Shown piece after piece: positions 1-64,000 of a stretch of DNA of 64,000 nucleotides. The first letter of the stretch is position 1, and each line of letters begins with the position of its first letter. Origin of the DNA: Parasitella parasitica NRRL 2501 (lineage: Eukaryota; Fungi; Mucoromycota); assembly GCA_025201805.1 (NCBI GenBank), contig MU619288.1, forward strand, positions 16,833 to 80,832, read 5' to 3'. The notes below the pieces were generated by a model. The model worked only from the letters and a program-made list of their open reading frames with translations, had not been told where the DNA came from and searched no databases. The position numbers and the translations under genes are program-made.

Positions 1-589
1 ATGTCATACTTGTAAAATGGAACCATTATATACATTTTTCTCGGAGATATAATGACTTGCTCAAGACCACATTCACCTTGGACTCGCTAATGCGGCAATA
101 ACAAGTAACTGCGTAAAATGGGCAATTAAACTACACTATGCAGTACAGAAAAGCATACAGTGAAGCCAAGAATAGTGATCATTCTTTAGTTTGGTTACAG
201 GGCAACAATTTTTCACTTTCAAGAGAAAAATCTGCAACTGTCAATAAATGCTACTGATACCGATACGCTCCCAATGTAGGACAAAAACTGCTCTAATAAT
301 ATCGTCATGAGGACGCCATAAACTAGTTACTGAGCTGATTTGATTTGTACAACTTTGAAAGTCTAATACACAGACTCAAGTGCTCGATACCACACCAAAC
401 GGTTTCCCAGAGCTCATGGGTACAAGGGAAAATGTATATCAAATTATCTTACTTCCAATTTCTTTTTCTTGTATGCTTACTTTGTGTCAACAGGGTGATT
501 CACTCGGTGGTGAGTTGTAGTGGTACAAATAGTGCTCAAAGAATCAGACTCAATCGTCGACAGGGCTCATAGCCACAAACATGGAAGAT

Positions 590-10396: not shown

Positions 10397-11043
10397 ATCT
10401 TGATCCTCTAACTTATTGTAACAACCCTACTATTATATCTCTTTTATTAAATCCCTGTATTTTTTTTATAATATTTTTATAATTTTATTTGTGTCTATAT
10501 CAAGACAATGTGGCATAAGTGTTATGTCTTCACAGCCACACTGCATTGTCAACAATAAACATTCCAATAATAGACCAAGCTTTCTTGGGTCATTAGCATT
10601 GAAAAACATGAGGTTTAAAGGTGATACCGTACAACATTTGATCTGTGAAATCAAAACCTTGTGCTTCTTTGAGAATATTAAATTTTATAAATTTAACCCA
10701 TACTGAGCTGATATATACTCATTGGCAATTTATCAGTGAGCTAATGATATAAAAAAAATAAATAGCACAATAAAGAGGTGCAAAGTTTTGAAACGCTAAA
10801 GGTAGAATTAAAAACTTTGATTTTCGAGAGATTTTGTTTGCGCCTTGTCAATAAGCAGGCAACAGGATTACATGTTGAGCGAAAATTATAAAAATGCAAG
10901 TTTATTTGAAATTAAAAGTATAAATATTATATGGGATTAAGATTTTCAAGGAAGTAATGATCTCTATCTATCTGTTCTATGCAGTAAAGTGTTCAAGTGT
11001 TTGCCAACGATCGGGTATATTTAATGTACTTGAGAAAAACTTT

Positions 11044-11307
11044 TTAAGCGCCAGTGTTGGTGGTATCAATGCCATGATTATTACTGAATTTACAACCCAT
11101 AGGGTCATAATAGTGACCGACAACGTCGGGATAATTACCACATCGCATGGGATCACGACTGTAAGCACTACTGACAATGGAAGGCGCAGGAGACGCATAG
11201 CTGCTATAAAGTGAATTGGCGGGAGTAGATCTTTCGTCTTCTTCTTGAATTTGTTTTTGGGCAAATGCCTTTTTGATAAGCTTGGAGAGATGCATATGGA
11301 GACCCAT
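11044..11307 (-). CDS. Small hypothetical protein (87 aa)
   Basis: ACAATG start context, TATATAAG about 65 nt upstream, uninterrupted ORF; no recognised domain. Confidence 0.5.
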   Translation of the reverse strand: MGLHMHLSKLIKKAFAQKQIQEEDERSTPANSLYSSYASPAPSIVSSAYSRDPMRCGNYPDVVGHYYDPMGCKFSNNHGIDTTNTGA

Positions 11308-11911
11308 TGTTATACGTATGTTTGTAAATTTGAGAAAAAAAAGAGGGTGTTTCGTTCAATCTCGAGTCCTTATATAGCGTAAAATATTCTGTCAAAACTG
11401 TTAGCCGTGCTTTCCGTACTTTTCCCTAATCATGTTATAATTGGCTCAAACACCCTATTAACTGTCTATATTTAGTAATCCTCGGACGTAGAAGATAATA
11501 CGACACGCTTCAAAAGTGATTTACATCGGATCTGATCCTCATATCGAGGTAAAAGGCCCATTAGCGTCATATGTGATCAATGAAGAGCCTTTATACCCAT
11601 CCAATATAGCTGAGAAGACCTCTAACGCTCTTCAGAAATTTGCTAAGGACCACTTTTCATAGCTTGAATAGTGTATTTTTTTGTTAGTAGTTTGATATAT
11701 TTCTTCAATTTTGTATATTCCTGTTAAGGCATTATTTTTTTTGATCCCAAGGAATACTGAAATAGATTATTCTCTTTAGAACTTGGCCAAAGGATAAACG
11801 TATATGCTCGACAAATATAATATATTTTTATTGGACAATCATGCTGAGGATTTTTTGGTATTGGTTAAATATGCTATGATACAATGAATTTGGATATACA
11901 CGGAATAATGT

Positions 11912-13094
11912 TTAGACTGTTGATGCAACTGGAACTGCTGCTGCCGGTGGGGGCGGGAGAGCACCTGCTCTTTGCAACCAGTTAGGTCTCCAAAGAACTG
12001 GCATAGCAGGCATGTATCTTCCAAAAGGCTGTTTAGTTATGTATCGAGGATCATTTCGAGTTGACATGACCAGAGAATGTTGCATTCGAATATGCTTCAA
12101 GATTGTCTTGTAAGAAAAATAATCACAGCCACATATTTACAATGCTTACCTCTGAATGATGGCCAATAACCTGAACTACAAAAAATACAATAAACGATAT
12201 CACGATACAAGCCTGCATAATGTAGACACCACGATACATTTTGTACTCATGTTCTATATTCAATTGTGTTAATGAATCATGAACCATGAACCATACGTTA
12301 TCCGATCTCTTACCATGATTTCTGTCTAGTGTTGTAGTAAGGCAATAATTAAAGCCAGTATGAAAGTATATGTCTAATCCCATGAAAACAATGTAAGAGC
12401 CACCGAGTGCTGCTCCCAACTGGTGCCAGAAACACGAATAAAGCGATAAAATCATAAAGACCACGACAAGTACAGTGAGCAAGATAGCTCTTCCAGAATT
12501 TGATGTAATTGATAAATTATCCTTCCAGCCCAAAATCCACAGACCTATTGTGAGACCTCCGAAACCACCGATCAACATGAGGTATAACTGGATCGTAACT
12601 GACATACACGTAGTTACCACTATTCCCACTATAAATGGTACAATAAAGTATATAGTTTCACGATTCTGCCCATAAGTTTGTTCAGGTTCAAAATTTGCGA
12701 GCATAATCCAGGTAACAAATCCCATGGTTATGAAACCTGCTAACTCTTGTGTACGAGTGCCAGCAGCGGTTTTATCCCACACCGGACGACATGCAAGTAA
12801 TAAACCACATACAATCATGACAATGCCCCCCAAAACACCCTGGATACTTAGATTGTATCCATCATCTAGGTTTGAAGAGTAGATAAGTACACAATATGTA
12901 TAATTGACAGGCAAGTTGCATCTACCTAAATTGATGGCTTTGTCTGGCAAATATAATACGCCTGGCTTAAATGTGGGTGTATCGACTGCTGGGGCTGCAC
13001 TACAGCACTGAGCTACAAATACCAAGATTAACGTCAACAATATTTGCAGCATGCTGGCTGTTGTTGATGCTGACAGGATATTTCTTGGAGGCAT
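11912..13094 (-). CDS. DUF4203 / TMEM198-like multi-pass membrane protein with signal peptide, 3 exons
   Basis: Signal peptide, about 7 hydrophobic helices, IGGFGGLTIGLWILGWK and ALGGSYIVFMGLDIYFHTGF motifs; GT-AG introns near 12256-12313 and 12110-12149. Confidence 0.8.
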
Positions 13095-13901
13095 TTTTCG
13101 AAGAGAAAGGAAAAAGAAGGATTTGCAGCAGACATTCTATATAAAAAGGAAGCTTATAAACAATAATAACAACATTTGAATCAAAAAAGTCAAGGTATAA
13201 TAATAACCCTAAATAGGCAATTGTCAAAGCCTTGTTGTACGCCCTGTTTTTACTATACTAAAAGGAATGTTTTGATTGTAAAGACCAGAAATAGTAGCTT
13301 TTTCGTTCGATCGACACCACCCCATGTCCACTGCCTTCTGAACGTATGCAGCTTTCACTCCTTTTTTTTTAAAAAAAAAAGAAAAAGAAAAGTACCCCAG
13401 ATATTCTACCATATGTGGAGGCATCGACAAACAATAAAACAAGACATGCATAGACAGGATAACCAGATATTATGTTTCATACTTGACCATCTCTCACGTC
13501 TAGAATCAAAAAAACTTAGTAGATGAGGACTTTGTAGCAATATAATGATGGCCCCAATATCGTTACTGTTACAAGTGTTGCTGATCTTGTTGAGTTTACA
13601 ATAGGAAACAAACTTGCTGCTCGACGGCATAAACGATAAGCAATGTCCGAAAAGATCTGTATGCCATCATGACCTTGACTCTTGCACACAAATACACAGA
13701 AACTACCCCGAAAATAAGTATTTTTTACCTTTTTTTTTTTTTATTACTATTTCCTTTGCTTGTATCAGTATATATGTATATGTGATTGTGTGATATTGTT
13801 GATTGTGGAGGTGAGGGCGAGGGTGAGGGCGAGAAAGTGTATTTTTGTGTAAATGTGTATAATTTCAAATTCTGAGGAGCATATATAATCCTTTCATGAA
13901 C

Positions 13902-15170
13902 TCATTGAACATCTTGCATGTGTGTATCATCTTGAGACTTTGATTTTGTATGTTGAGGATCAATGAAAAGAGTTTTCCAGCTTCTCATTAAATGCTGACA
14001 GCGATCCTTGATCACGGTATCGTCCTCAAATGGGTAGGAGCAGGCAGCTTTTACAACTTTACCAATCTTAGTATCCTAAAAGTGCGAATTAAGTGTTTGT
14101 CCCCCTCCCGTACTCTCCCTCTCCCGTATACACTTACTTTAAGAACGTTATAGGTCATTGGTGCCTCTTCGATCTCTTTGATGATTTGCAATATCTTGGG
14201 ATAATCCTCATGTGGAATTTCACCCTAAGAATGAGGGTAAATTTCCTCTTTTTCCAGCGAGAACACACACAACCCAGACATACCTCTTTCTTGTTGTATA
14301 CTAATCTTTGCAACTTGTGTCTAATATGATACATTTTCTTATATTCTGGTGATTTCTTGTTATCATCTTTTGAGGGATCATGAGTGATGGGAGATTCGTG
14401 GCCTTCTTCTTTTTCAAGTGACATGGATTTACGCTTCAAATAAAAATAGATTTTAGAACCCACAAACAATACAAAAGAAAAGCACACTACTTACTCTTCT
14501 CTTTCTATCCAAACTATCGCCAACAGCAGTGTCGCCTACAGCATCTTCCTCGTCTCCCAACGCTAGCTTACGACTTTTTCTTTTTTGCGCTGCTGATTCC
14601 ACTGTATTTACCTTTCGTTTTGTCGGCTTACCATTTGCCACCGGCTTCTTCCTGTTAGCCACTGGCGTTGATGCCTTTTTTCCCTTCCCTTTCTTCACCT
14701 CTTCCTCATCTTCCTCTGCATCTTCACCGTCTTTATCTTCAAGCATTTGCGCTACCACAGAAGGATTCAGCGCTTGACGTACTGCCATTTCCAAGTCTTT
14801 TGTTTTGAACTTCTTTGCTTTGAGGTCATTTTCGACATGTTCATTATCAAAAGGCCTAATAGCATCAGGACCAAAAAATCCACTGAACCAAAATAATCAG
14901 CACCTGCTTCTTGCTTTGTTTATAAGAGACTTACTAATCTCTTGAGCCATAAAAAAACACGGTATACAAAGCGTTCTTTGTCTTGCTCTTTTGCTTCAGT
15001 ACTTTGGCTGGCACATTTGAATCCACTTCGATCTGTAAACTATTTGTAAATACATTTGGTTATGGTAAGGTAGCCTTCTTAATTACCCTGGCTGGCCACC
15101 AAGGATATCCTTTCAGCTTTGCGAATACAGTTGTTCCAGGTAAATACTCTGTTCGTCCTTGTTGACGCAT
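13902..15170 (-). CDS. PWWP-domain chromatin protein with a C-terminal TFIIS-N-like helical region, multi-exon
   Basis: Exon 1 MRQQGRTEYLPGTTVFAKLKGYPWWPAR; LYTVFFYGSRD; acidic/basic linker; last exon DTKIGKVVK...IKDRCQHLMRSWK. Confidence 0.88.
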
Positions 15171-16799
15171 GGTTTTATATAGTTTCTCTGTAACGACTCG
15201 TTTTTTTTTTTTTTTTCTTTTTTTTTTTTGGCTTGGGTTAATGATTGATAGAAGCAGAACGGTGAAAAGAAGAAAGGTGAAAATGCGCGTTTAGCTGCAA
15301 AGAAAGAAAGAAGGAAGAAATGTGGTAATCCAAACACTAAAAAAATATGGGAATTTTTTTTCAAACCATCATATGATTTGCCGTCTTAATCTGGTTCAAT
15401 TAGCTGCATTTCATTGCTTGCTTTTTCGCCTGGCTTGACAGCACCGACATTTGATTGCTGGGCTTTAGTTTTTTTAGGATTAGAGTCCATCCTGCTTTAT
15501 TCTGTCAAAAAAAAACATTCCCCAAAAGCATCGTTTTTAAACGGAAAAATCGATGGTGGGGCGTGAAAATGTGTGGTTTTATTTATGTCTTTTAGTGATG
15601 GTAGTACGAAATCAATTACAAGATAAATAATACAGAAAGACATGTTTTATTCGACAAGTAAAAGTCATACATATGATTTGCTTAATCTTGTTCTATTTAC
15701 AGCGTATGGAACAGGCAGAGTGAGAGGCTAATGTTAATCTTGTTTCTTTTTTTTTTTTTTTTTTTTTGCTCTCACTTATTTTTCTGCTTGTTTGAAGATT
15801 GATGTTTATTTATAGCATTCTCAAAATGACGACATTTCTTCCAAATTCCATGCTTTTCATTATTCCATGGAGGCATCTCTTGACAGATCAAATAGCCTAA
15901 TATGTCACTATGCACTTTTGACAGCTTTGAATTTATTTTCTCCTTGGCGATACCGGAAGAAGTATCCTTACACTGTCAAAGACAGCCCCCCCCCAAGTCT
16001 CAAGCAGAGCTGTGATAGCCGGTAGCCAACAAATTGTTATAATCCTTGCATTTCCACGAATTTTTCTTTTACAGAATTTTGGTAAGACTAGAAAGGTTCA
16101 GCAGATATCAATATTGTTAATAAGCCTGTGTTGAACTTTCACTGGGTGAGCTGATGTTCCAATTTTCTATGTTTTTATTTGTATCTTTTATACCTCTTTT
16201 GCTTTTTTGGCACGGCTGGGGTTTGTGGTGATGATGTCTGGGCTTCTGCTTGTGCTGGCGCTGGTGATTGTCGGTTTGTATTCTGTAATTGAAGAAAAGA
16301 ACGGGAAAGCATACAAGTAACTCATTACTTGTTTATAATAGTCTTCTGTATCAAGTACTTGAATTTTTTTTGTTACAATCTGCTGGTAATAGACAATAAT
16401 ATGCTTGTATTGAAGAGAATTTGCTTTCGCTTGAAAGTAGATTGAAGATGCTTTGTGTGTGTGTCTGCTTGATCTTTGGACTTGGAAGCTTATCCTAAAG
16501 CATCAACAAACGCTTGCTCTGTTATAGTATTGCTTACCACAAACTTTCTATTAATAAGCGAGTTAGTTAGAGATCAATATTGTCCTTCTCTCCCAGTGTG
16601 TATGAGGTCCTTTTCTTTCGTCCTATATTGGATTGTCTTGGTTTCTGGCTTGCATTATATCTTGACTCGATTGACATTATAAACTGATTTGGCTCCCTTT
16701 TAATGTCAAAATTACCCTGTGGTGTTCATCGTTGGTATGTATTGAAATCCCAAGTATATATCGAACACGCTAGACATTGTAACAAGGTCTCACTAAGAA

Positions 16800-17350
16800 T
16801 ACTATTGGAAACAGAAGAGCTTTTGTTGTTATTGGAACACGGTCGATATCATTATTGCTGACAGTAAGGTGATGTTGAGATTTTTATCGATATAAACTTG
16901 ACCAAGTTTTGCGTTAATTTATGAGGTTATTGTCGTCTATTTGATGGAAGTCAAGGCTAGGCAAAGAGTGTCTACAGTTCGATATTAAACGACTTGAAAG
17001 GAGAGAGAAAAGCATATGATTGCAAAGTTAGAAAGTCTAATAAACGTTTAATGCTTGAAACGGCATCTTCAACGCACTTCTCAGCCTGTTAAGAAAGAGC
17101 AATAAACAAAAGCATAACTAGTGTCTCTTTATAGAAAGTTACAATTAAGCACATCATGATAAAGTTGGGAATCTTTATTTGGACGAATTTTTATAAGCTC
17201 AAACGATTTACCTGATAGAAGATATGAGAACTGTGATGCTCTGTGAATAGGAAGGTAATGAACGAGGTGGGAGTACTTTGAGACTGCGGACACCAGTTTT
17301 ATTATGCAAAAGCTCGAGCGAGAATTCTATTCTACAGCTGATAGATGTCA
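16800..17350 (+). pseudogene. Heavily decayed hypothetical/TE-associated gene remnant
   Basis: Short stop-interrupted coding-like segments (e.g. DKVGNLYLDEFL); family assignment tentative. Confidence 0.2.
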
Positions 17351-17730
17351 TATACAAACAAGGGTGGCAATTGAAGATTATAAATGGCTTTGTTATTTGG
17401 CCGACAAAAAAGCTTGCCGCCTAAAATGCTTTTTTTTTTTTTTTTTTTTTGGCTTGTCCAAGTATTTTTCGGCTAGTCGCCCAGGTGTTTATTTTTTTGG
17501 TTTCTGAGTGAAAGACAGAAATTTGTCGCCCAAAAAAGCAATATTCAAACTTGGTGCTAAGCATCAAAACAAAATTTCGAAAACACCAATGATTTGCCAG
17601 CACTGTACACTCACAACTTATTGATACACTATTATAAAGGTAGCCGCGCTGGTGCGAGTCGAGGAACGTGAATGTGGACAGATAGAATTTTTTCATGTGG
17701 CCCGCGACTCTTTTCTTGTACGGACGATAG

Positions 17731-18573
17731 ATGATGAATACAGTGCTTACCATATTAATTTTCATAGCATTTGTATACCTAGGAAATGCACTGCCTGTGC
17801 AAATCAGCAACGAATTATCTTCAGAGCACGCTTATCGCTGGCCTTCTTTGCTCAGTGCTCCAATGGTCAAGTTGCTAGGCGATGTTTGTTACGAAAGTCT
17901 ATTCGAAGAATTTAATATGGATGTTCCTTGCTTCAAGCTACTCATCTCGAAAGGGCTCGGAATAGGCATTGTTATTGGAGGAGCCGTCGTAAAGATACCT
18001 CAGATCGCAACCATTCTCAAGCATCGTTCAGCACAAGGTTTATCGTTGACATCGTTTTTATTAGAAACGTGCGCTTATCAGATTGTCATGGTGTACAACA
18101 TGCGATTACATAACCCATTTAGTACTTATGGTGAAGTTCTATTCATGACGTTACAAAATATCGCTATTTGCATGCTGATTGTTTGGTATACCAGAGAAAG
18201 ACATCTTTCTGGAGTTACGTGCCTTGGGTTTATCTGCATTTTTGCAATGCTGGTACTTGTGCCTAGCTGGTGTATGGCGCTTTTGTACGCGTTGCAGATA
18301 CCTATTGGATTAGCAAGCAAAATTCCTCAGATTCGAGCCAATTATTTGAATCAGTCTACAGGGCAACTGAGCGTATTTGCGGTTCTAAATTACTTTGCGG
18401 GAACAACAGCACGAGCATTTACGACATGGGCTGAATTAAACGACCTCGTTATGTTGGGAGGTAATCTGTTAGCAAGCATACTAAATGGCATTTTGGTGTT
18501 ACAGCTGATTATATATTGGAAAAAGCAGCCGTTGTCAGCTAATAATGGTAGTGAATGGACCAAAGCAGATTAA
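17731..18573 (+). CDS. MPDU1: Mannose-P-dolichol utilization defect 1 (MPDU1/Lec35) PQ-loop protein, intronless
   Basis: LLISKGLGIGIVIGGAVVKIPQI...SAQGLS...PFSTYGE...SKIPQIRANY..STGQLS; two PQ motifs. Confidence 0.92.
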   Translation: MMNTVLTILIFIAFVYLGNALPVQISNELSSEHAYRWPSLLSAPMVKLLGDVCYESLFEEFNMDVPCFKLLISKGLGIGIVIGGAVVKIPQIATILKHRSAQGLSLTSFLLETCAYQIVMVYNMRLHNPFSTYGEVLFMTLQNIAICMLIVWYTRERHLSGVTCLGFICIFAMLVLVPSWCMALLYALQIPIGLASKIPQIRANYLNQSTGQLSVFAVLNYFAGTTARAFTTWAELNDLVMLGGNLLASILNGILVLQLIIYWKKQPLSANNGSEWTKAD

Positions 18574-18745
18574 GAAGGCTTCCTGATCTTCCTTTTACCT
18601 GGTCTTTTGGGGGATTGTGTGATTACAAGAGAGGAGCGGCAAATCTCAAGCTGGCCTTGAACGTGAAAGAAGCTTACAAACCGTTTCTATAAATTTGTAC
18701 AAAAAAAAGATTTTCTATTCTCAGTTTTTTCCGTAAATTAAACAA

Positions 18746-19527
18746 ATGTTACCACAACTTTTTTATAAAAAGCCAATTCAATTAGCTTCCTTTACCTCTT
18801 TTTTAAAACGTAATAAATTTGCTACCATGAGTCCTGCTGTGGAACAAGAACAACAACGGCCCGAGATCTCTGTCGAAGAGCAAATTAGACTCGCTGAAAT
18901 TGAAAGAGATGATCTGGACATTGTCAAGATCAACCGTGCTGACCCTGCCATTATTGAATATGAAGCTTACAGCCATTCATCTGAAAGCGAAAAGAAGCAC
19001 TCTTTGACTGTTTCCGTAAGTAAGATAGACAAAGTCGGCTGGAAACCATGTATTAATTCAGGCACATTTAGACTTTGAGAGGTCCCGGTATGATCATTGT
19101 ACCTCCTGTCATGTTCTACAACAAGACATACACAGAATTGACTTCTGTTCTCCATCTTGGCAAAAACATTTGTGGCCACGATGGAATTATTCATGGCGGT
19201 TTGGCCGCCACAATCCTTGATGAAGCTTTGGCTTGTGTCGTAAGTATATTTGGCACGGTGTTGTGATTCAATCTTTTGACACATTTTCCCATATAGGCAG
19301 TCCCTGCGTTGCCCAATATGTTTGGTTTCACTGCCAACCTCAACATTAACTATAGAAAACCTATCATGTCAAATCAATGGGTTGTTATGAAATCCAAGTT
19401 GGATAAGAGCGAAGATCGCAAAGCATATGTTTCTGCCTGGATCGAGAGTTTAGATGGTAAAACTGTCTTTACTGAAGCAACTTCCTTGTACGTTTCTCCC
19501 AAAATGCCTGTCAAGAAACCCGAATAA
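18746..19527 (+). CDS. Hotdog-fold acyl-CoA thioesterase (PaaI/THEM4-like), probable mitochondrial presequence, 3 exons
   Basis: HSLTVS|TLRGPGMI...HLGKNICGHDGIIHGGLAATILDEAL...FTANLNINYRKP; HGG-D/E catalytic motif. Confidence 0.88.
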
Positions 19528-20039
19528 TCTATTTAAACACTACACATTTATACAATAACATATTTAATAATTATTAGCTTTTGTTCGGAAGAACATGCAG
19601 ATCAGGTAATAATAACATTTTCCTTTTTCAATCATTAATAAAGACCCTACGTTCTCCGTGATATAATCGCTTGTAGTCTTTTTATTTAATTATGTTTGGA
19701 AATAATCGTTACTCACATTGAAATAACTCAAAGGCCACATGAAGGATATACCTTACGTAGTATTAACAAGCAAAAAAAAAAAAAAAAACAAACGACAGCT
19801 ATTTCCACAACTACGTTAAAGAATCTTAGATCTAAGGGATCTTTACAAATATATCGTACATAGCGGAAGAAAGGCTAATTTTGACCAACTTGAGACTTTG
19901 TCACACGGAGAGAAGCTCTTTAGTTTTCTATTTCAAAAAGAAAAGAAAAGGAAAAAAAGCCAAATATACCAGAAAACATGAAGTATCTTGGAGCTGCCAT
20001 CACTAGATTACCTGACATTTGGAGATCTAAAAAAGACTG

Positions 20040-20680
20040 AACGACACAAACGGCGAGGGTTGGTTGAGATCAAATTTGTACAGCTTTATCTGGAAACTTT
20101 TCATGTAAAGAGAGCCGAATGCTATTCTTGCGGTAATCAAGAAGTTGTAGGACTACAATGAGAATTTTGCTCAGCAGCGTGTAGATTTTATCCTGCGTGG
20201 CAATCATGATGGAACGGACTATTTGGCCTTGGAGGAGAAGTCAAACAGATCAAGAAGCTCACTACGACTTTAAAGAGGGGAAAAGAATGCAACAGCATAT
20301 GCTTAAATTTTGGTTAGATTGGGTTGCTTCAGCAATGTTAGTTTGGGAGTTGGAGCCCGTAGCTTTGCCAATGGCAGCAAACAAAACTCATTGTGTTTAG
20401 AGCTCGCCTTCTTCCGTCAGGCCACTTTATTGCCTACGAAAACGCAACTGCCTCCGGTCATTATGCTGCTGCTGCCCGATTGCTTCATATCGTACTCTTT
20501 ACCAAGCGCCTCGTCAATTTGAACCATTTGAAGCTAATAGCCATGATCAATGTAATAGAAAAGTACTCGAACGAACGTCTGGATTTATCGATCAACACCG
20601 ACCAGCCCTATGTCGCCTTCTACGGATCAAGCCAGGAATCGCAAAAGAGCACGAAAGGAAGGGAAAAATTACGATGACAA
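20040..20680 (+). pseudogene. Frameshifted PD-(D/E)XK (restriction-endonuclease-fold)-like hypothetical gene
   Basis: Stitched translation QQRVDFILRGNHDGTDYLALEEKS...YDFKEGKRMQQHMLKFWLDW...KLIVFRARLLPSGHFIAY...RLLHIVLFTKRLVNLN, with a D...ExK arrangement; stops and frameshifts. Confidence 0.45.
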
Positions 20681-26599: not shown

Positions 26600-26810
26600 A
26601 ATGAATAAGGCTTATGTGGTGGTTGTATCTGGTATTGGATAATGTAGCTATCCATAAGCCTGCTGTTATCAGAGCATTAGTCGAAGCAAGAGGCTGTTGG
26701 TGTATTTATTTGTCTGCTTACCCTTCCTGTCTCAATCCAATTGAAGTGTTCTGTGGCGTAAAAGTAAGGTTGGAATCAAAGAAACTCATGATCGTTTGGC
26801 CCCTTGGTGT
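26600..26810 (+). mobile_element. Tc1/IS630 transposase fragment (second D to E)
   Basis: YLVLDNVAIHK...ARGCWCIYLSAYPSCLNPIEVF. Confidence 0.8.
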
Positions 26811-55028: not shown

Positions 55029-58000
55029 CTAGTAATGATGGTTTTGCTGAGAATAATAGTATTGACTTGCAGGCGACTTTCTATGCTGAAAATCATTTTG
55101 CGGTGGTTTAGTGGCCCATTGCTCTTCGGTCTCCACAGTTTCTGGGGTTGGGCCCCAGCCGTCTTCGTCTTCCGCTTGATCGTAATATTGATGGCGCTGA
55201 GGTGACAACGAGGGATGTCCCACAACATGGTGGTCATCAGTATATGGCTGGCTGTTTACGGGCGGTGCGTAGTAGTAATAGGGTTGTGGCGGTGGATACA
55301 TGGCAGACGGATCCATGCCATAGTAGACCATGCCGTTCGCTTCGTATCCAGGTGGCAACTGGTGCACATTTGATGGTGGTGGTGGAGGAGATGGGGTGTA
55401 ATATTTATGGTGCTGCTGTTGCAAGTTAGGAGGCGGGCTCGTACTTGAAGATTCACCGAGCTGTAGCGGACTCACAGATCCGCCTGAAGGAGACGAGTGC
55501 ATAGGGAATGGCATGGCATACATGGGGTTACCATTGCCAGTGGGAATCATGGGCATATAGGTTATATTTCCATTTATAGGAGGTGCTGAATGATGAGGGG
55601 CTGGGTAATACGTTGAATGGTATGTTTCTGGTTCTTCTCGTTGTTGGCGCCAGCTCTCCTCAAAGCTGCTGCGAGGGGGTTTTGTGCCGCTGCCATTATT
55701 GCTGGGGCGGCCATTTGTTTTTCGGCTGAATTCCGGACGAGGGCTACTTTGGCCACTGTCATGTCGAAGGTAAGGTTTTGAGGCAGTTCTAGGCGAAAAG
55801 GAGGGTTGGTGATGTTGACCTGGCGCAGTCATGCCAAGCACTTGTTCGTCTTTTATCCAGCCAGGTTCCTCTTCTGCCTCGAGAATGATTTCTACGTCTG
55901 AATCATCGTCACCAGTGCTTTGAAAATTGCCCCAAGCCGAGGCTTCAGGAGAGTCGCTTTCTTCGAACGTATTAATTGATTCAGGAGCATGAGATCCCAC
56001 CCTTGTAGAGAAATAACCTCGGCTCTTCTTCTGTTGCGGTTGCTGCTCATGTACGGCGTTGCGAATTTTCTTACTACTGTATTCTTTATCTGCATTCCAG
56101 TTTGTACTGCTGCTTGATCGAGTATTGTTCCATCCGCCCTTGCCTCCACGAACAGACGAGGACGAAGAAGAGTGTGATTGATCAAAGCTAGCAGCAGAGT
56201 CATTCCAACCTGAGGTTTTAGCGCTCTCTGGTGCTTCCGTCGCATTCCATGACGCATTGGGGTTCGTCTGTTCTAAAGCTGGCTTTGCTCCCCAACCATC
56301 TTCAGCTGCAATAAACGCCTCAGCTTCACGACTACTTTTAGCAGTTGGTATACACTTACCGCTCTTCTCGTCGTTGTCCTTTGGCTGAGCAGACGGTTCT
56401 GCCCATCCGCTTTTTTCAGATGTTTCGATAGCCACGCCATCAATAGTGCCGCATCCATTAGTACTTGCTGCTTCAGGTGTAGGTGCAGGCGCAGATGCAA
56501 GTGCAGGCGCAGGAGCAGGTGCAGTCCAGTTCCCGTCAGTAACTTGAGCAGCCTTTCGATCCACCTTGAGGGGCTTTTGTTGCTTGCCATATGATGATGG
56601 TTTTGACTTGTGATTAGCCTCTTGCTGGTGGTAATTGCTGCGACGAAAGGAGCCAAAATTATCATAGCTTCGGTTGTAGACAGTTTTGTTCAAGTCTGAA
56701 GATGCTGCTTTGTTGATACTGGCCCAGGACGAAGATGCCCTTTCTTCGCCTGGTATTTCTTCTTTGTGCAGTCTCGATTTATTCCACCCTTCTTTCTTTT
56801 GAGTATCGTCGCTCTTGCCACTGGTTGCAGCACCCCATTGAGATGCTGCTGATGTTTTCCAATCATCAGCTTCATTTGCAGCCGAACTATCCATTGCAGA
56901 TATATCTTTTTTGGCAGTGCCCCATCCATCTGTTGCTGCTTCTTGGTTCTTGTTGATTTGCTCTTGATCTGCATTACCGTCGGCAATGGTTGATTGCTCT
57001 GTATTGAATTCAGCAGTTCCCCAGTTGCTGCTAGACACGTTTTTATCTGCTGGCGGTTTTCCCCAGCCATCGCTGTTGGAAGGCGTGTTGAGCGTTAGTG
57101 TTTCAGCTTTGCGGCCATGACTGGATTCTGCGGTGGCAGGAGCCAGAGACTCAATAGCAGCAGGCGCTTTCCAGCTGTCATCTGCGTTGACTTCCGGCTT
57201 TGCTCCCCACCCATCACTTGTATTTTTAGACAATGGCTCTTCTTGGGCTTTGGCTGGGTTGCTCCAGCTATCGTTGGTGTTGGAGGCCTGTGTATCTGCG
57301 TTCGGTTTGTTGTTTGGCGGATCTCCCCAGCCGTCAGAAGATTTTATCGTCAACGGAGCTCTCCATCCTTCCGCAGCCATCTCGCCTTTGACTATAGGTT
57401 CTATTTCCTTGGCTCTGTCAACTGAACCCCAAGCGTTCACCCTTGATGTGTCAGGAGTATCCGATGAAGACTGATCTACTGTGTTACCGGGGCTTGCAGA
57501 AGTTGATAATTGCGGCCATTCTTCATTAGCACGCTTCTGAAACCTGCCAGGTCTATCTTGCTGTTGATGGAAGCTGCCTCCTCCACCACCACCCCGTCCG
57601 CCCCGTCCTCCTCCTGCTCCTCCTCCTACTCCTCTGCCTCTGCTTTTGCTTCCTCTTCCGTTAAAGTTATGGTATCCGTTGGTATTGTGTCTTGGTTGAC
57701 TGTGATGGATTTGTGATTCACCAGATTCCAGCATCTCTCGTTTTCGTCTCTCGTCCTCTTCATCCATTCTCAACAGCTCATCGTAGCCACTGTGATCCCA
57801 TTTTTTGTACATCAGAGGGTCTAAATTGCGATCGTGGGCCTGCTTCTTGGCAAAGGAACTAGCAGTGCTGAAATGTGGTACTGCTTCACGCGTCTCGGTC
57901 AACGCATCTTCTCTGTAGCGATTGTCATGGCCCCAAAATAGTCCAACGTAGGGAACAAAACTTGGATCTTCTGCAAGTTTTCGTCGATACTCACGAAGTT

Positions 58001-58394
58001 CATGGACAGTCTTTTCCTTTCCTTGTTGCTGCAATTCTTGATAGTCGATTTCAGCGGTGGCGAGCGGCTGATCCTCTTTGTCCAAGGCGGTGGCGTTTGT
58101 GTCCTGAATCTCTTTCTCTTGCTCGTCGTTAATTACTCGATCGTCTGATCCTAAATCCGAGTCCTCGTCAGAATCCTCGTCCGACTCTTTGTCTGAATTA
58201 TCATCACTTTCGTCTTCTTCAGAATCATCGTCATCGGCTGTGGAAGAGCCTTCATCGTCATCATCGTCATCATCGTCTTCATCGTCTTCATCGTCATCGA
58301 TATCGGTGGTGATTTCGGTAACGACGGAGCCTTCTTCTTCGTCGTCATCGTATTCGGAATCGTGTCCTCTTCGTCTATGTAATAAATGCGACAT
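55029..58394 (-). CDS. Barentsz/CASC3 (Btz)-domain protein with acidic N-terminus, RGG box, GW/WG-rich region and Pro/Tyr-rich tail (intronless, about 1121 aa)
   Basis: DPSFVPYVGLFWGHDNR...KWDHSGYDE matches the Btz eIF4AIII-binding pattern (P...G.F..HD.R ... W.HD.F); the ORF-track start at 58433 is TTG, so the first ATG is 58394. Confidence 0.8.
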   Translation of the reverse strand: MSHLLHRRRGHDSEYDDDEEEGSVVTEITTDIDDDEDDEDDDDDDDDEGSSTADDDDSEEDESDDNSDKESDEDSDEDSDLGSDDRVINDEQEKEIQDTNATALDKEDQPLATAEIDYQELQQQGKEKTVHELREYRRKLAEDPSFVPYVGLFWGHDNRYREDALTETREAVPHFSTASSFAKKQAHDRNLDPLMYKKWDHSGYDELLRMDEEDERRKREMLESGESQIHHSQPRHNTNGYHNFNGRGSKSRGRGVGGGAGGGRGGRGGGGGGSFHQQQDRPGRFQKRANEEWPQLSTSASPGNTVDQSSSDTPDTSRVNAWGSVDRAKEIEPIVKGEMAAEGWRAPLTIKSSDGWGDPPNNKPNADTQASNTNDSWSNPAKAQEEPLSKNTSDGWGAKPEVNADDSWKAPAAIESLAPATAESSHGRKAETLTLNTPSNSDGWGKPPADKNVSSSNWGTAEFNTEQSTIADGNADQEQINKNQEAATDGWGTAKKDISAMDSSAANEADDWKTSAASQWGAATSGKSDDTQKKEGWNKSRLHKEEIPGEERASSSWASINKAASSDLNKTVYNRSYDNFGSFRRSNYHQQEANHKSKPSSYGKQQKPLKVDRKAAQVTDGNWTAPAPAPALASAPAPTPEAASTNGCGTIDGVAIETSEKSGWAEPSAQPKDNDEKSGKCIPTAKSSREAEAFIAAEDGWGAKPALEQTNPNASWNATEAPESAKTSGWNDSAASFDQSHSSSSSSVRGGKGGWNNTRSSSSTNWNADKEYSSKKIRNAVHEQQPQQKKSRGYFSTRVGSHAPESINTFEESDSPEASAWGNFQSTGDDDSDVEIILEAEEEPGWIKDEQVLGMTAPGQHHQPSFSPRTASKPYLRHDSGQSSPRPEFSRKTNGRPSNNGSGTKPPRSSFEESWRQQREEPETYHSTYYPAPHHSAPPINGNITYMPMIPTGNGNPMYAMPFPMHSSPSGGSVSPLQLGESSSTSPPPNLQQQHHKYYTPSPPPPPSNVHQLPPGYEANGMVYYGMDPSAMYPPPQPYYYYAPPVNSQPYTDDHHVVGHPSLSPQRHQYYDQAEDEDGWGPTPETVETEEQWATKPPQNDFQHRKSPASQYYYSQQNHHY

Positions 58395-58599
58395 GATAAA
58401 CTCGCAGGGTTTCAATGATGAAAGAAAATGCAAATGGGTTGTTTGAAAAATTTAAACTTTCCTGCACATGCTTGTTTAAAAGAATCAAGAAGAAAAAAAT
58501 TGTGGTAACCATAGTGACCTTTTTTTTTTTCTATGGTTACTTATTGTTGTACCTTTGATATCATTTATATGGTATCCGCGAGAAAGGCATCTCTTTTTC

Positions 58600-59300
58600 T
58601 GGCATTTTTCGCCATATCACAGAACACATCTGATTCACGTTAAAAAGATCAAAGCCCATTGAAGAGAAAAGGAACGATCCGGCTACCATTGCCTCAAGAA
58701 AAAAATTTGTCGAATCCTTGCAAGACCTAGGGATATCCTACAAAACTAATTGCATCTCTGTAGATGAATCAGGTTTCAACGTAAATCTGATCCGTCAACT
58801 AGGATGGTCTCGAAAAGGTGAAAATGCTGCGATAACTACCAAGACGAAGAGAATCCTGAACGTTACTATCATCTCGGCAATCTCGAGCAAAGGTGTTGAA
58901 GGTGTTTCCGCTAAAATTGTAAAAAGAAGGTTACAACTTGAGCAATTTTTATCGACTTTCCAAAACCGTTGATCAAAAGACTCGATGATAGCAATGCTGC
59001 ACCGCATTATTTCATTATGGACAGTGCTGGGATCCATACTCCCCATGAAGTCAAAAATTTCATCCAGACAACAAGGCATAAAATACACTTCTTGCCTCCA
59101 TATTCGCCTTTTTTTGAACCCAATCGAAGAAAGCTTCTCCAAGCTTAAAGCTTTGACAAAAAAGAAAGCCAGGCTTAGGCAGCAATGAGTTTTTGCAGTA
59201 TATTGGAGATTGCAGTAGAGAAATTACCAGAGAAGATTGCAAGGGTTGGCACAGCATCAGCTTTTTTTCTGATTGCCTTGCCTCCAAAGAAATCTATTAA
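58600..59300 (+). mobile_element. Tc1/IS630 transposase pseudogene
   Basis: TLKRSKPIEEKRNDPATI...CISVDESGFNVNLIRQLGWS...FIMDSA.IH...PPYSPFLNPIEESFSKLK across frameshifts. Confidence 0.88.
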
Positions 59301-59619
59301 AGAATAAAGATAAATTTTATTTCTACTATCAACCCATTATCCACCAAGTTAAATCAGTAAAATCACTGCTTTTATTTTGCAATTTCTGAAAAAAAAAAAA
59401 ATCCAAATAAATGATAAAGGTCATGGTGATTTCGATAATAAATATTAGGATTTCTGGTAAAAAAAAACCTTTTATTTCTGATAAAAGCTAACAAGTTTCT
59501 GAGGGAAGAGAAATGTCTCCCTGAAAAAATTTCAAGTGGGGATTTCCATATTTAGAGAAAAAGAATAATTGCTTTGTTTCATTCTAGTGAAAATACAAAG
59601 AGAATATGTCATATCTTTA

Positions 59620-59800
59620 AGTCCAAGGTAGTCTTTAGAAAAGGTTACGGTTGTCTACTGGCAAACATCTGCGATTCTTGGCGTAATTGTGTCTGTTGAC
59701 TTTAGATCAATAAACCTTTAATTGGATTCAGGAACGGAGAGCAAGGTTGAAGATAAACACATCTATGTCCTTGAGACTTCATAAGTTTCTATATTAATAA
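59620..59800 (-). mobile_element. Tc1/IS630 transposase C-terminal remnant
   Basis: LMKSQGHRCVYLQPCSPFLNPIK, a degenerate YLPPYSPFLNPIE. Confidence 0.65.
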
Positions 59801-61033
59801 TTTTTTATGAATGGGTGTGTTATCCTGGTGGCAGATTGATTCATTTTCTCTGGCATTTTTTTTTATACCCTCAGTTGATTTGGCATTTTCTAATGTAAGA
59901 GGTTTTGTCAGACATATATTAAGCTGGGTTCTCTATATCCAGTTGCACAGTAGAACAGCTAGTCAAACCTATGTCATCTTTTTCATAATACTGGAATGGT
60001 TTAAAAGTGTGTGCCTTTGCAAAGCCATAGTAGATTTTAGGCGCCTGATTTTTTTTTTTTTGTCTGCGCGACCACCAACTTCAGCGTATTATTGTCAAAA
60101 AAAGACAAAAAGTGTAAGAAAATAATGTTTAGCGATCTCAAACACAAAAACAAGTAATGCAAATTAATGCATTAGACTATAAGGCATCTTTTGATTACAT
60201 AATTGCATAGTTTAGAGCAAGTTTTTGTACTTTTCAATTTGAAATCAAATGAAGGTAGCGACTTTTCTGACTTTTTTCGGAAAAGTATTTTTCAAAATTG
60301 GAGCGTGAGATTGTCAGGCCAGGTACAGGCATGCAAGTACTACCATTAAAAATCCAAAAAGCACACTATTTAGGTGAACGAGACGCAAATGTTTTTCGCT
60401 TGAATTGGGTAAGCTATAGCTTCTCAAAGCTAATGCTTCCTTCAAAAAAGCACAATTTTTCTTCGATAGCGGAGATTAAACGTGTCCAAAATTAGGAAGG
60501 AAAAAGTTCTTTCAGAAACTCCATTTGGACAATTCGAAAACAAAATTACTCGTTTTAGGCAAAATATCATCCTCTGATATTATGCATACCACGGCTGTCA
60601 GTCTATGATAATAGCTGTAATTTTGGACGCTCTACACGATGGTGTCATTTTGATAATCCCCGCATATTCATGGAAGGAATTATGTCGAGAAACCCTCAAA
60701 AACAGATCAAGAGGAAAAAGTCGACATTTTGCTTAATCACAGCGCATTTCCACTCTTTCAGACCAAAGGACGGTCTTTTACGATCATTTTCCTCCAATAT
60801 ATGCTATAGTAAAAAGTTGCATTTTTGAGGTCGAAATCGAGGATAATACATAATCGATGATTTTGGATGTGTGGATACAAGGAAAAAATCGAAAATATCT
60901 GCCATTTTGCATCGAAAAAAAAATCATGCTCAAATTGCACCAAAATCATATATAACATAGTCTTTTCCCAATGGATACTACAGTCGACGAAAAAAGATTG
61001 GCTCAATAAATAAAATGATTGGTCAATTCGAAA

Positions 61034-61125
61034 TGGAAATGGGTCACTGATTCTGAAAATGGATCACCAAGACAAAAATTGTCAGTTTTGAAAATGGATC
61101 ACTCAGTATGAAAATAGATCGTCAA
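61034..61125. repeat. Four copies of a TGAAAATGGATCAC-like motif (spacing 20/35/20 nt)
   Basis: Copies start at 61034, 61054, 61089 and 61109, at the 3' end of the transposase; candidate subterminal transposase-binding repeats. Confidence 0.6.
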
Positions 61126-62444
61126 TACAGAAATACAGTGCATGCACTTTTTTTTTTGCTTCTTGTAGTCCTTTTTCGCAATTCAAGCATCTTTGCCAGA
61201 ATGTCAAGGAATGCTTTATCCAATTCTCGCAATCTTTTCTGCTGATGTGAAGTAATGCGTTGCGAGTACGATCAGAGATTTTTTCATTCTGCCTGACAGA
61301 AGAAGGATCGTTATTTACAACAGTCTTCAGTTTGGACCAAAACTCCTCAATTGGATTCAAAAAAGGAGAATAAGGGGGGCAAAAAGAGAAGTTTATAGCC
61401 ACGCTGCTCAACCCAACTTCCAATAAGTGCAGCCTTGTGAATGGATGCATTATCAAGAACTAGATATTTATAGCTCATGTTAGCCGCATCCAGTGTCGTA
61501 AGGACTTGTTTAATGTATTCAGGAAAGTCGCTGCTGGTAGTGCCCTTTTTCTTGGAGGCTTGAGCCTTCTCGCCAGTTCGAGTTCGTTTTCTGCTCCTAT
61601 CACCAAGTACAACTTCTTTTCTAGATATTGTGATTAAGCCACTCTTGCAAATGGCACCCAAGTTGCTGACATTTGCTCCCTTCGTTTGAACATCAATTTT
61701 GCAAGGTGTTTCAGCCTCAGGCCATCCATATGAGTGATGCATGCTCCTATTGAAACCAGCTTCATCCAAGAATACACATTTATTCATAAAGTCTATGTTC
61801 TGACTAATCCAGTATGCCACCGCATCTCGTCTTTTAGCAATAGTTTCATCCGTATTTCTGCCATAATATCTGGGAATGATACGCTTGTAGGTCAAGCAGC
61901 ACTTCTTCTTCATGTGGTTTTCAACTGATCTGGGGGCGATCTGTATATCTCTGAATTTTTTTGACAGGTGGTCTGTAACAGCTTCAACTGTCAATGTTGG
62001 CTCATGAGCCAGCAGTTCAAAGATAAATACAGTATGTTCATCTTGTAGTATTGTTGGCCGTCCCTTTCTTTCTTTGGCCACGACAGAGTCAGGGAATCCT
62101 CTTTCTCCTACTTCGCTTGTCATTTGATGCCACTGCTTGATTTTACGAATAGCTGTTGATCTGGGAAGCCCTACCTTTCTACTCGCTTCACTGATAGACA
62201 TACTCTCAAATTCTTGCAACAGATTGATCAAATTGACTACCTTTGTTTGGTTCTTCGTAATGTATGATCCCCTTTCTTTTTTTACTACATCAAGAGAGGT
62301 CTCTTTGGAGTGAGGTTTAGTTTTTTTCTTAGCTTCCCTTTGTGCTGCATTTACTGCTGCAGTCTCTTCCCAGTCCATATATGATTGAATCATTACAGGT
62401 ACTATCTCAATGTCAAAATTGTATTCTTCATTCATGTTTAGCAA
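61103..62444 (-). mobile_element. Near-intact Tc1/IS630-type DD34E transposase with one +1 frameshift
   Basis: HTH (SISEASRKVGLPRSTA), GRP, DEAGF, LDNASIH, then LPPYSPFLNPIEEFWSKLK in the other frame; 34 residues between the second D and E; extra C in the C-run at about 61374-61379. Confidence 0.93.
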
Positions 62445-62629
62445 TATGAAAAAATCAAGAAGAGAAAAAGAGGAGAAGATTTAGCTAATCCTCAAACTGT
62501 GTTGTCATGGTAGATTTGATTGTTTATTCAAGATCTTCGTTCAATCCGAGCTATCTGCTAATGAATATCCATGTGTTGTACACATACACACACATAAATT
62601 TAGGTATCATAAATTGCTTATATGCACAG

Positions 62630-62935
62630 AGGAGATAAATACGACCGTCCAATGATAGGCAAAAAACAGTAGTTGCATGTGGATCATCAGGTTTAAAAGG
62701 AACATACAAAAATAACACTCCTGTACCAGTAAAGGCAGGTTATTCACCCTTCATCTTTTTTGTTAGTACATTGAAACTGACATCAATTTACAAGTAGAAA
62801 GTGCAAGGAGCCATCGCTGAACGTGCTGTTGTAATCCCTGTGGATGAATTCCGTACTACTATGACATGCTGTCATTGCCATGGTAGAGTTGAAAACGTTC
62901 TTCGTCTTGCACACCACCCTTGTGAGCACAAGTAA
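62630..62935 (+). pseudogene. Fanzor (eukaryotic TnpB) RuvC-II/zinc-finger fragment with a GC-AG intron
   Basis: Spliced translation (intron 62735-62797) NDRQKTVVACGSSGLKGTYKNNTPVPVK|KVQGAIAERAVVIPVDEFRTTMTCCHCHGRVENV; hallmark VDEFRT(S)xxCxxC. Confidence 0.8.
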
Positions 62936-62942
62936 GTAGGAA

Positions 62943-63650
62943 GAGAAGTATAGAAATCTTTTAAAAGAATTACAACGTCATATTGATAACAAGCTTGCAA
63001 CCACCTTCACAAAACTTGCCACAGAGTCCCACTTTCAAGTAATTTCTCACAATGTACAAAATTTGAAAGCTCACATCGACCAAATTGAAAATGATCCGGT
63101 ATATCTTAGCTCTAGTGTCATTTTACTCTACGAAACTTGGACTTTGACTTCAAATACTTTACAAATTCCTGATTTCCAAATGGCATCTGTAGTCCATTGT
63201 CCAAGTGAAACTGTACGTAAAGCCATTGGCTCTTGTTGTTACATTTCTACCACAATAACAGACAGCGTTTCTACTCATTCCAAGCTTTTGGTTTAGAACA
63301 GCAGCAACACATCTGTCAGTACATCTTGGGTAATTATCAACAATGAACTTTACTGTAGTGTTTATGCATCTCCTGGTGTCCCTACTACGTTGTTGTTACA
63401 AGCAATTAGGCACATCATCGAACAATGCGCAAGCAAAATTGTTATCGCAGGTGATTTCAACATTAACTTTAACGAAGAATCCTCAAAAAAGACGGCGTAT
63501 GAATTTATTGCATGAAAATGGACTGCAAAGCTCTTTGCCCAATGCAGTCCAGTCGTCTACTAAAGAAGGCACTTTAATTGATAATATCTTTACAGACAAA
63601 CAAGTATATAATTCAGGAAGATACATCTCTCTTACCAGTGAAATAAAATA
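62943..63650 (+). mobile_element. AP-endonuclease (EEP) domain remnant of Helentron/Helitron Rep-helicase type
   Basis: VISHNVQNLKAHIDQIENDPVYLSSSVILLYETWT...VYASP...VIAGDFNIN...STKEGTLIDNIFT; stops and frameshifts; truncated before the SDH motif. Confidence 0.72.
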
Positions 63651-63713: not shown

Positions 63714-63828
63714 ATGAGCCGCCGGGCACTGCGTTTTTTTTCCCGCAGCGAAGCGGAGGGCAAAAAAAAAGTGGTCGGGGGCATCCGTCTAATAGCCAAG
63801 CAGGCCGTGGGTCTGCGGCCTTTTTTTT
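63714..63828 (+). other. GC-rich hairpins, putative rolling-circle element terminus
   Basis: Imperfect stem 63714-63785 around a GCGAAGC mini-hairpin (63748-63754); second palindrome AGGCCGTGGGTCTGCGGCCT (63802-63821) followed by a T run. Confidence 0.55.
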
Positions 63829-64000
63829 CTTTTGTAGCAATAGCGAAGATCATGTTATTTTGCAAAGATGAATGCATTCGGCTGGATTATGGCCATCAAC
63901 ATAGTCTTGTCGTCGTCTATTCTAGACTGGCGGTATCCCTAGGGTTTACATGCATTCGCCTTCTTTGCAAAGTATTGTTTCGAGTATTTTTCAGAGTCGG

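What the first reader, a model, noticed from the sequence alone, without database searches (positions are those of the whole stretch)
62630..62935. Hidden intron-containing Fanzor (eukaryotic TnpB, RNA-guided nuclease) fragment, absent from the ORF track
Seen: removing a 63-nt intron (AAG|GCAGGT...CTGAC...AAGTAG|, 62735-62797) gives KTVVACGSSGLKGTYKNNTPVPVKKVQGAIAERAVVIPVDEFRTTMTCCHCHGRV. Established: 'VVAxG...G..P.P....L......V..VDEfrTS..C..C' is the RuvC-II-to-zinc-finger segment of Fanzor1/TnpB proteins, which are omegaRNA-guided endonucleases carried by eukaryotic DNA transposons. Inference: this copy is a truncated relic (upstream frameshift near GDKYDR, no RuvC-I or RuvC-III visible), implying that a spliced Fanzor family exists or existed in this genome and may have intact copies elsewhere.
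Basis: partly seen in the sequence, partly recalled or inferred. Interest (0 to 1): 0.85.

Follow-up and report, generated by a model that had tools for sequence, protein, structure and literature searches.

The report
Dead Fanzor1 fragment in nested transposons
This is a real but dead 77-codon scrap of a fungal RNA-guided DNA cutter (Fanzor1) caught inside another transposon; the scrap is ordinary, but it points to an uncharacterised mould subfamily whose intact members carry an extra, probably zinc-binding, insert next to the cutting site.

Summary
Confirmed as Fanzor1. Window 62639-62734 and 62798-62931 match residues 808-883 of 985-aa Mucorales proteins that keep the DPG / E / RD RuvC triad and fold like SpuFz1 (Z 16). 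The 63-nt gap lies exactly at an intron of Helicostylum and Rhizopus homologues, and the next ancestral donor survives at 62932. Correction: RNA contigs of a related strain splice 59 nt (GT at 62739), not 63, which breaks the Fanzor frame, and join the fragment to a downstream endonuclease remnant. About 8% of the gene is left; RuvC-I, RuvC-III and the conserved 3' flank are absent. It starts a 7.8-kb single-copy block that splits one Tc1 copy. No intact copy of this subfamily was found in the genome, only two more scraps; the scan has already noted many other Fanzor relics here. Intact-looking kin occur in Mucor circinelloides, Helicostylum pulchrum (in MULE transposons, one with a transposase) and Lichtheimia ornata. 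They carry a 60-70 residue zinc-finger insert with a conserved C-x-H..C..C motif that solved Fanzors lack. Verdict: ordinary relic of a known family; modest interest as a pointer to that subfamily.

The parts
62639..62734 (+). Fanzor1 exon A remnant (32 codons; RuvC strand and lid-proximal segment, = P0031 808-839); conserved YGDA decayed to CGSS
   Evidence: 53-70% identity to best kin; YGDA in 52 of 56 kin
62735..62797 (+). Ancestral phase-0 intron (63 nt, GC donor); RNA of a related strain uses the GT at 62739 instead (59 nt)
   Evidence: same site, GT, in homologues; joint
62798..62931 (+). Fanzor1 exon B remnant: RuvC-II Glu (62846-62848) six residues before the first CxxC (62867-62878), and the C-x-H that opens the subfamily insert (62921-62929)
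62932..63024 (+). Second ancestral donor (GTAAGT at 62932); Fanzor homology stops here; in RNA it is spliced to an acceptor inside the endonuclease remnant (93 nt)
62604..62658 (+). 55-nt GT-AG intron seen in RNA; removes part of the former coding sequence, so probably a new, cryptic intron
62988..63639 (+). Broken EEP (APE-type) endonuclease remnant, Helitron-like by my reading; stop at 63294, frameshift near 63497
   Evidence: (PF14529 E 0.0024, below cut-off); Helitron origin is inference
63716..63825 (+). G+C-rich double hairpin after the endonuclease remnant, single copy; possible Helitron-type 3' end
   Evidence: (z -2.2); no Rfam match
62476..62494 (+). Left copy of an imperfect 19-nt direct repeat (16/19) bounding the 7,779-nt block; right copy at G000:C52:87106
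60979..62494 (-). Tc1/IS630-type element: TA, TIR from 60981, DDE_3 transposase 62444-61347 with frameshifted tail to 61103; its other TIR lies at G000:C52:87106-87343

Best explanation
A non-functional internal fragment of a Fanzor1 gene. Shown: it encodes only the RuvC-II glutamate region and first zinc pair (about 8% of a 985-aa protein), keeps two ancestral splice sites, has drifted at conserved positions, and forms the left end of a 7.8-kb single-copy block of transposon debris that interrupts one Tc1 copy. Shown in a related strain: the region is transcribed on the + strand and spliced with sites that destroy the Fanzor frame. Inferred: the parent was an omegaRNA-guided RuvC DNA endonuclease carried by a DNA transposon (MULE in the homologues where ends could be defined), which cut vacant or target sites next to a TAM; this copy was cut down at both ends by deletions, and the block entered the Tc1 copy after it had inserted, probably as a repair-type insertion that duplicated about 19 nt. 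It makes no nuclease and no guide.
For: Homology and triad. Intron sites. Absence of RuvC-I, RuvC-III and 3' flank near the locus. Decay (CGSS for YGDA; TTMT for TSVT in 48 kin). Out-of-frame splicing. Tc1 ends belong together (first 85 nt of TIRs 84/85 identical, TA duplication, flanks rejoin to the empty site of a multicopy repeat) while other Tc1 copies lack the block. Junctions bridged by contigs of other samples, so no assembly artefact.
Against: The 19-nt repeat has 3 mismatches while the TIRs are nearly identical, so it is not a clean target duplication; how the block arrived is unresolved. Splice joints rest on single contigs from one run whose RNA nature is a guess (supported by three GT..AG joints) and from another strain (about 97% identical). 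1,235 nt of the block and parts of other Fanzor loci read N, so an intact copy in withheld or unassembled DNA cannot be excluded. No activity has been measured for any member of the subfamily.
Confidence: 0.88

Rival explanations
1. The Fanzor was original cargo of the Tc1 element (a composite Tc1-Fanzor transposon like ROr-1, ROr-2, MCi-1), later wrecked by further insertions.
For: The fragment lies between the two TIRs of one Tc1 copy, divergent from the transposase; Mariner-Fanzor1 elements are known in Mucorales (PMC3627910).
Against: Four other Tc1 copies run straight from the junction into the TIR with no cargo; the block is single-copy; homology starts mid-gene about 145 nt from the junction; kin are linked to MULE, not Tc1.
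Confidence: 0.08
2. The block is a 5'-truncated Helitron2-type Fanzor element: Fanzor plus EEP endonuclease, flanked by a long target duplication as in Chlamydomonas CRe-1/2/3.
For: 5' truncation, short extra sequence after the left repeat and a 19-nt repeat resemble the CRe pattern (7-19 bp TSDs, PMC3627910); EEP remnant and hairpin follow directly; the only other EEP relative in the genome also abuts a Fanzor, of another family and on the opposite strand (L051).
Against: CRe copies keep their 3' ends, this one does not; none of nine homologous loci has EEP sequence; the block's right end is an unrelated truncated ORF with no terminal hairpin.
Confidence: 0.1
3. The relic has been co-opted as 5' exons of a functional chimeric transcript; an ATG at 62880 in another frame splices in frame onto the EEP remnant.
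For: Three splice joints and shared junctions in other strains; the EEP part is less decayed there (+2 nt at 63497 restores a frame; 38 extra nt at 63639).
Against: The ORF stops at 63294 after about 107 codons in this strain, and no change at that stop is listed for the other runs (some differences not shown); low contig depth; cryptic splicing of AT-rich transposon debris is expected.
Confidence: 0.04
4. Not a Fanzor: a chance or unrelated zinc-finger match.
For: Exon B is below the Pfam cut-off and finds nothing relevant in PDB on its own.
Against: Both exons independently hit adjacent segments of the same proteins at E 1e-10 to 1e-16 in a local set; those proteins fold like Fanzor1.
Confidence: 0.01

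Closest known systems
Fanzor1 (SpuFz1, PDB 8gkh; PpFz1, 9cf0; GtFz1, 9cer; PMC10432273, PMC11423790)
   Same: Full-length kin have DPG RuvC-I, Glu six residues before CxxC, RD RuvC-III and the same fold (Z 16.1, rmsd 5.0 over 255 residues for 8gkh).
   Different: The window holds only 77 codons. Kin are 13-17% identical to solved Fanzors, have 60-70 residues between the two zinc pairs (20-30 more than SpuFz1/PpFz1 in the profile alignment) with an extra C-x-H..C..C motif, and several have a long helical, Gln-rich N-terminus.
Mucorales Fanzor1 elements of Bao and Jurka 2013 (ROr-1..4, PBl-1..3, MCi-1..10; PMC3627910)
   Same: Multi-exon Fanzor1 genes in fungal DNA transposons, including Mariner and MuDR (9-bp TSD) types.
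   Different: MCi-1..10 and PBl-2/3, read by eye, lack this subfamily's motifs, and text search found no TPIPVK/TPVPVK. Their MuDR-type elements encode no transposase; H. pulchrum L035 encodes a MULE transposase beside the Fanzor.
Chlamydomonas CRe-1/2/3 Helitron2-Fanzor1 elements
   Same: Spliced Fanzor1, 5' truncation, long variable direct repeats.
   Different: CRe copies keep an intact 3' end and are high-copy; this block is single-copy and 3'-truncated.
Other Fanzor1 families of this genome (79 PF07282 matches)
   Same: Same superfamily, same host, mostly broken.
   Different: 25-38% identity over the shared segment and a short zinc finger.

Membership tests
Fanzor (fingerprints of PMC10711439) | RuvC-II Glu six residues upstream of first CxxC (E-alt) | tested here: met
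   Window 62846-62878 reads E-x6-C-x2-C (definition)
Fanzor (fingerprints of PMC10711439) | RuvC-I DPG motif | tested here: not met
   Absent from the locus; present in kin, Asp in 77 of 80. Lost by truncation.
Fanzor (fingerprints of PMC10711439) | Second CxxC and RuvC-III RD | tested here: not met
   Homology ends at 62931; RD Asp in 54 of 57 kin
Fanzor1 lineage (descent) | Sequence and fold closest to Fanzor1 rather than Fanzor2, TnpB or Cas12 | tested here: met
   Kin profile: PpFz1 E 6e-15, SpuFz1 3e-10; model pLDDT 87, top 7 Foldseek hits all Fanzor1, Fanzor2 rank 12
Fanzor1 lineage (descent) | Eukaryotic gene with spliceosomal introns | tested here: met
   Two intron sites shared with H. 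pulchrum and R. microsporus genes; joints in RNA contigs
Functional Fanzor1 system | omegaRNA region 3' of the ORF up to the element end | tested here: not met
   A ~110-nt 3' flank conserved in three genera has no match in the window or the unmasked next 9 kb
Functional Fanzor1 system | RNA-guided, TAM-dependent DNA cleavage | not testable with these tools
   Needs biochemistry on an intact homologue
Mariner/Tc1-Fanzor1 composite (ROr-1 type) | Fanzor lies between the TIRs of a TA-flanked element | tested here: met
Mariner/Tc1-Fanzor1 composite (ROr-1 type) | Several copies share transposase plus Fanzor | tested here: not met
   Other Tc1 copies lack the block
MuDR/MULE-Fanzor1 element | TIRs and 9-bp TSD around the Fanzor | tested here: not met
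   Not at this locus; met in H. pulchrum kin (28-bp TIR 24/28, TSD GTATAAAAT in L034)
Helitron2-Fanzor1 (CRe type) | ATIRs, terminal hairpins, intact 3' end, RepHel | tested here: inconclusive
   EEP remnant and hairpin only; no RepHel seen in the unmasked block

The most novel reading that the evidence does not exclude
The fragment marks an undescribed Mucorales Fanzor1 subfamily whose TNB domain carries an inserted second zinc site (C-x-H..C..C, kept in Lichtheimia even where the canonical C4 finger has changed), spread by autonomous MULE transposons, still active in L. ornata, H. pulchrum and M. circinelloides, and with a distinct omegaRNA; the insert would change target-strand handling or cut position.
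Probability: 0.3. Interest if true: 0.5.

Novelty: new member of a known kind. Interest (0 to 1): 0.27.

Why it matters
The locus itself matters little: it is a dead scrap among dozens of Fanzor relics in this genome. Its use is as a pointer. The subfamily is annotated only as hypothetical proteins, falls below the Pfam TNB cut-off, and its long CxxC spacing would escape regular expressions that allow 12-18 residues (PMC10711439). It offers intact, multi-copy candidates for Fanzor biochemistry and an apparently autonomous MULE-plus-Fanzor element in which the role of Fanzor in transposon spread could be tested. The locus also shows that a predicted GC-AG intron in a relic need not be the one the cell uses.

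Tried and rejected
Word-index search with exon B found nothing (query too short). Exon B alone gave no relevant PDB hit. First structure model (16 rows, pLDDT 49) was discarded. A tree of the short segment was unresolved and placed exon B in no supported clade. DNA homology upstream of 62660 did not beat shuffles, so I do not claim the upstream frameshift. Folding of the conserved 3' flanks was not better than shuffles (z -1.7 to 0.2), so omegaRNA status rests on position and conservation only. No Rfam family near the locus. M. circinelloides P0031 and P0044 had no contig on record. Metagenome scan gave only distant loci. Supplement searches of three Fanzor surveys found no accession or motif of this subfamily, but files were cut or missing, so prior inclusion in those surveys is not excluded.

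Full report
Observation. The + strand frame starting at 62639 reads IRPSNDRQKTVVACG...TPVPVK, then 21 codons ending in TAG, then KVQGAIAER...DEFRTTMTCCHC...CEHK and a stop. The E-x6-CxxC-type motif is found once in the window and never in 100 shuffles. One script translated the RNA-supported joints locally, only to read their frames.

Identity. Exon B scores 17.9 bits on PF07282 (E 0.0035, under the cut-off). Against 1.84 billion proteins it returned 19 hits; 16 of the 17 I read carry the same motif, one is a C2H2 repeat, and all nine motif-bearing clusters looked up are Mucorales hypothetical proteins. Full-length members (M. circinelloides P0031 985 aa, P0057; H. pulchrum P0025; R. microsporus P0024, P0059) have RuvC-I D (77 of 80), RuvC-II E (104 of 106) and RuvC-III D (54 of 57). 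Exons A and B match P0031 808-839 and 841-883 at 53% and 59%. A profile of 85 kin hits PpFz1 (E 6e-15) and SpuFz1 (3e-10); the model of P0031 630-975 (pLDDT 87) has Fanzor1 structures as its top seven Foldseek hits and Z 16.1 to 8gkh. The E-alt spacing is one of the two Fanzor fingerprints in PMC10711439. So the fragment descends from a Fanzor1 gene.

Introns. Homologues open a 21-codon gap at 62735-62797. Two H. pulchrum families and one R. microsporus family have a GT-AG intron at that P-V-K| site and a second one two bases after the C-x-H codon; other kin have neither. The window has GC at the first site and GTAAGT at the second (62932). Contigs of run X1 (a related strain, about 97% identical; RNA by the tool's guess and by three GT..AG joints) remove 62604-62658, 62739-62797 and 62932-63024. 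The middle joint uses the GT four bases inside the ancestral intron, so exon A runs into a stop within eight codons and has no upstream ATG. The simplest reading is a GT-to-GC donor change followed by use of a cryptic site. Each joint rests on one contig.

What is missing. No RuvC-I, second zinc pair or RuvC-III lies near the locus. A ~110-nt non-coding flank conserved after the stop in R. microsporus, T. elegans and M. circinelloides, the likely omegaRNA and element end by analogy to SpuFz1 (PMC10432273), has no match in the window or the unmasked downstream 9 kb. Conserved positions have drifted: CGSS for YGDA (52 of 56 kin), TTMT for TSVT.

Context. Left lies a Tc1/IS630 copy (DDE_3, E 2e-14) from TA|CAGTCGACG at 60979 to 62494, 84-88% identical to seven other copies. 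Its missing end is at C52:87106-87343: the TIRs match 84/85, TA is duplicated and the flanks rejoin into the empty site of a multicopy repeat. Between lies a 7,779-nt single-copy block bounded by a 16/19 direct repeat: the Fanzor fragment, a broken EEP endonuclease (62988-63639; PF14529 E 0.0024), a hairpin, a withheld stretch and further debris. Other Tc1 copies lack the block, which argues against an original Tc1-Fanzor element. Contigs from other samples bridge the 62494 and 62932 junctions, so the mosaic is real and shared between strains.

Rest of the genome. G000 has 79 PF07282 matches of other Fanzor families. For this subfamily only two more scraps were found: a RuvC-III end with part of the conserved flank on C122 and an internally deleted piece on C66. 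Masked stretches limit this negative.

The subfamily elsewhere. It spans Mucor, Rhizopus, Helicostylum, Thamnidium, Choanephora, Benjaminiella, Blakeslea, Cunninghamella and Lichtheimia. The two CxxC pairs are 60-70 residues apart and enclose C-x-H..C..C, conserved in 66/74, 67/77, 54/62 and 53/60 sequences and kept in L. ornata, where four 828-aa copies are on record and the canonical finger has changed. A second zinc site is my inference; I could not inspect coordinates. In H. pulchrum the genes sit in 5.3-7.9 kb elements with 28-bp TIRs and a 9-bp TSD; L035 also encodes a FAR1-MULE-SWIM transposase, and a MULE remnant lies upstream of the R. microsporus gene. Bao and Jurka (PMC3627910) described Mariner- and MuDR-borne, multi-exon Fanzor1 in Mucorales, the MuDR ones without transposase; their MCi-1..10 proteins are not this subfamily. 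Introns in Fanzors are published (PMC10530073). I could not exclude that the 2023 surveys contain members.

Mechanism. Parent (inferred from family knowledge): a RuvC endonuclease loaded with an omegaRNA from the element's 3' end, cutting DNA beside a TAM and helping its transposon persist. This copy (shown): 8% of the gene, no guide region, spliced out of frame; no nuclease can be made. Arrival of the block (inferred, unresolved): insertion into an existing Tc1 copy.

Verdict. Real, correctly named, ordinary relic; new member of a known kind. Earlier scan notes record many Fanzor relics on other DNA of this genome. Interest 0.27, carried mostly by the uncharacterised subfamily.

Noticed in passing
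L039 (H. pulchrum) 8919-20632: Two different Fanzor genes of this subfamily face each other tail to tail, separated by the 5' part of a MULE transposase, with ~750-nt inverted repeats upstream of each; L034 and L038 carry the same inverted transposase stub, suggesting recombination between two MULE-Fanzor families.
   Followed up: partly
L038 7695-7782 and L039 9695-9782: An 88-nt palindrome (perfect in L038) upstream of the Fanzor start in H. pulchrum elements.
   Followed up: no
L035 13690-15929: In the transposase-bearing MULE only ~70 nt separate the Fanzor stop from the transposase frame and ~15 nt its last frame from the element end, leaving no obvious room for a standard right-end omegaRNA.
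   Followed up: no
L036 11526-11625, L037 11554-11672, L078 13739-13848: Conserved 3' flank in three genera ending at ATACGTAGGT, after which similarity stops; no TIR found in L078; candidate omegaRNA scaffold and element end.
   Followed up: partly
L079 10244-10355: G+C-rich hairpins directly after the stop of the second R. microsporus family; unrelated to the flank above; z-score not significant.
   Followed up: partly
P0089, P0178-P0180 (Lichtheimia ornata): Four 828-aa copies with DPG/E/RD intact, canonical zinc finger changed to C-x-H / C-x2-H, extra C-x-H..C..C kept.
   Followed up: partly
L051 444-2115 (G000:C190): The only other EEP remnant related to 62988-63639 lies head to head with a Fanzor of the abundant family.
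   Followed up: partly
window 59616-60980: Multicopy non-coding repeat (over 30 copies at 90-94%) into which the Tc1 copy inserted at a TA.
   Followed up: partly
window 58574-59148 (+) and 26614-26712: Further broken DDE_3 transposase remnants of a related Tc1 family.
   Followed up: no
window 63862-64000: Start of a repeat with high depth in run X4, running into a withheld stretch beyond the window; not pursued.
   Followed up: no
L053 6642-7067 (G000:C52 about 86641-87066): Truncated Cys/His-rich ORF at the right end of the block, resembling a transposase DNA-binding domain by eye; no Pfam hit.
   Followed up: partly
L054 3212-5585 (G000:C64): Long Fanzor of another family with an intact-looking C-terminus; its middle is masked, so integrity is unknown.
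   Followed up: no
window 55029-58433 (-): 1134-codon ORF rich in GW/WG repeats with an acidic N-terminus.
   Followed up: no
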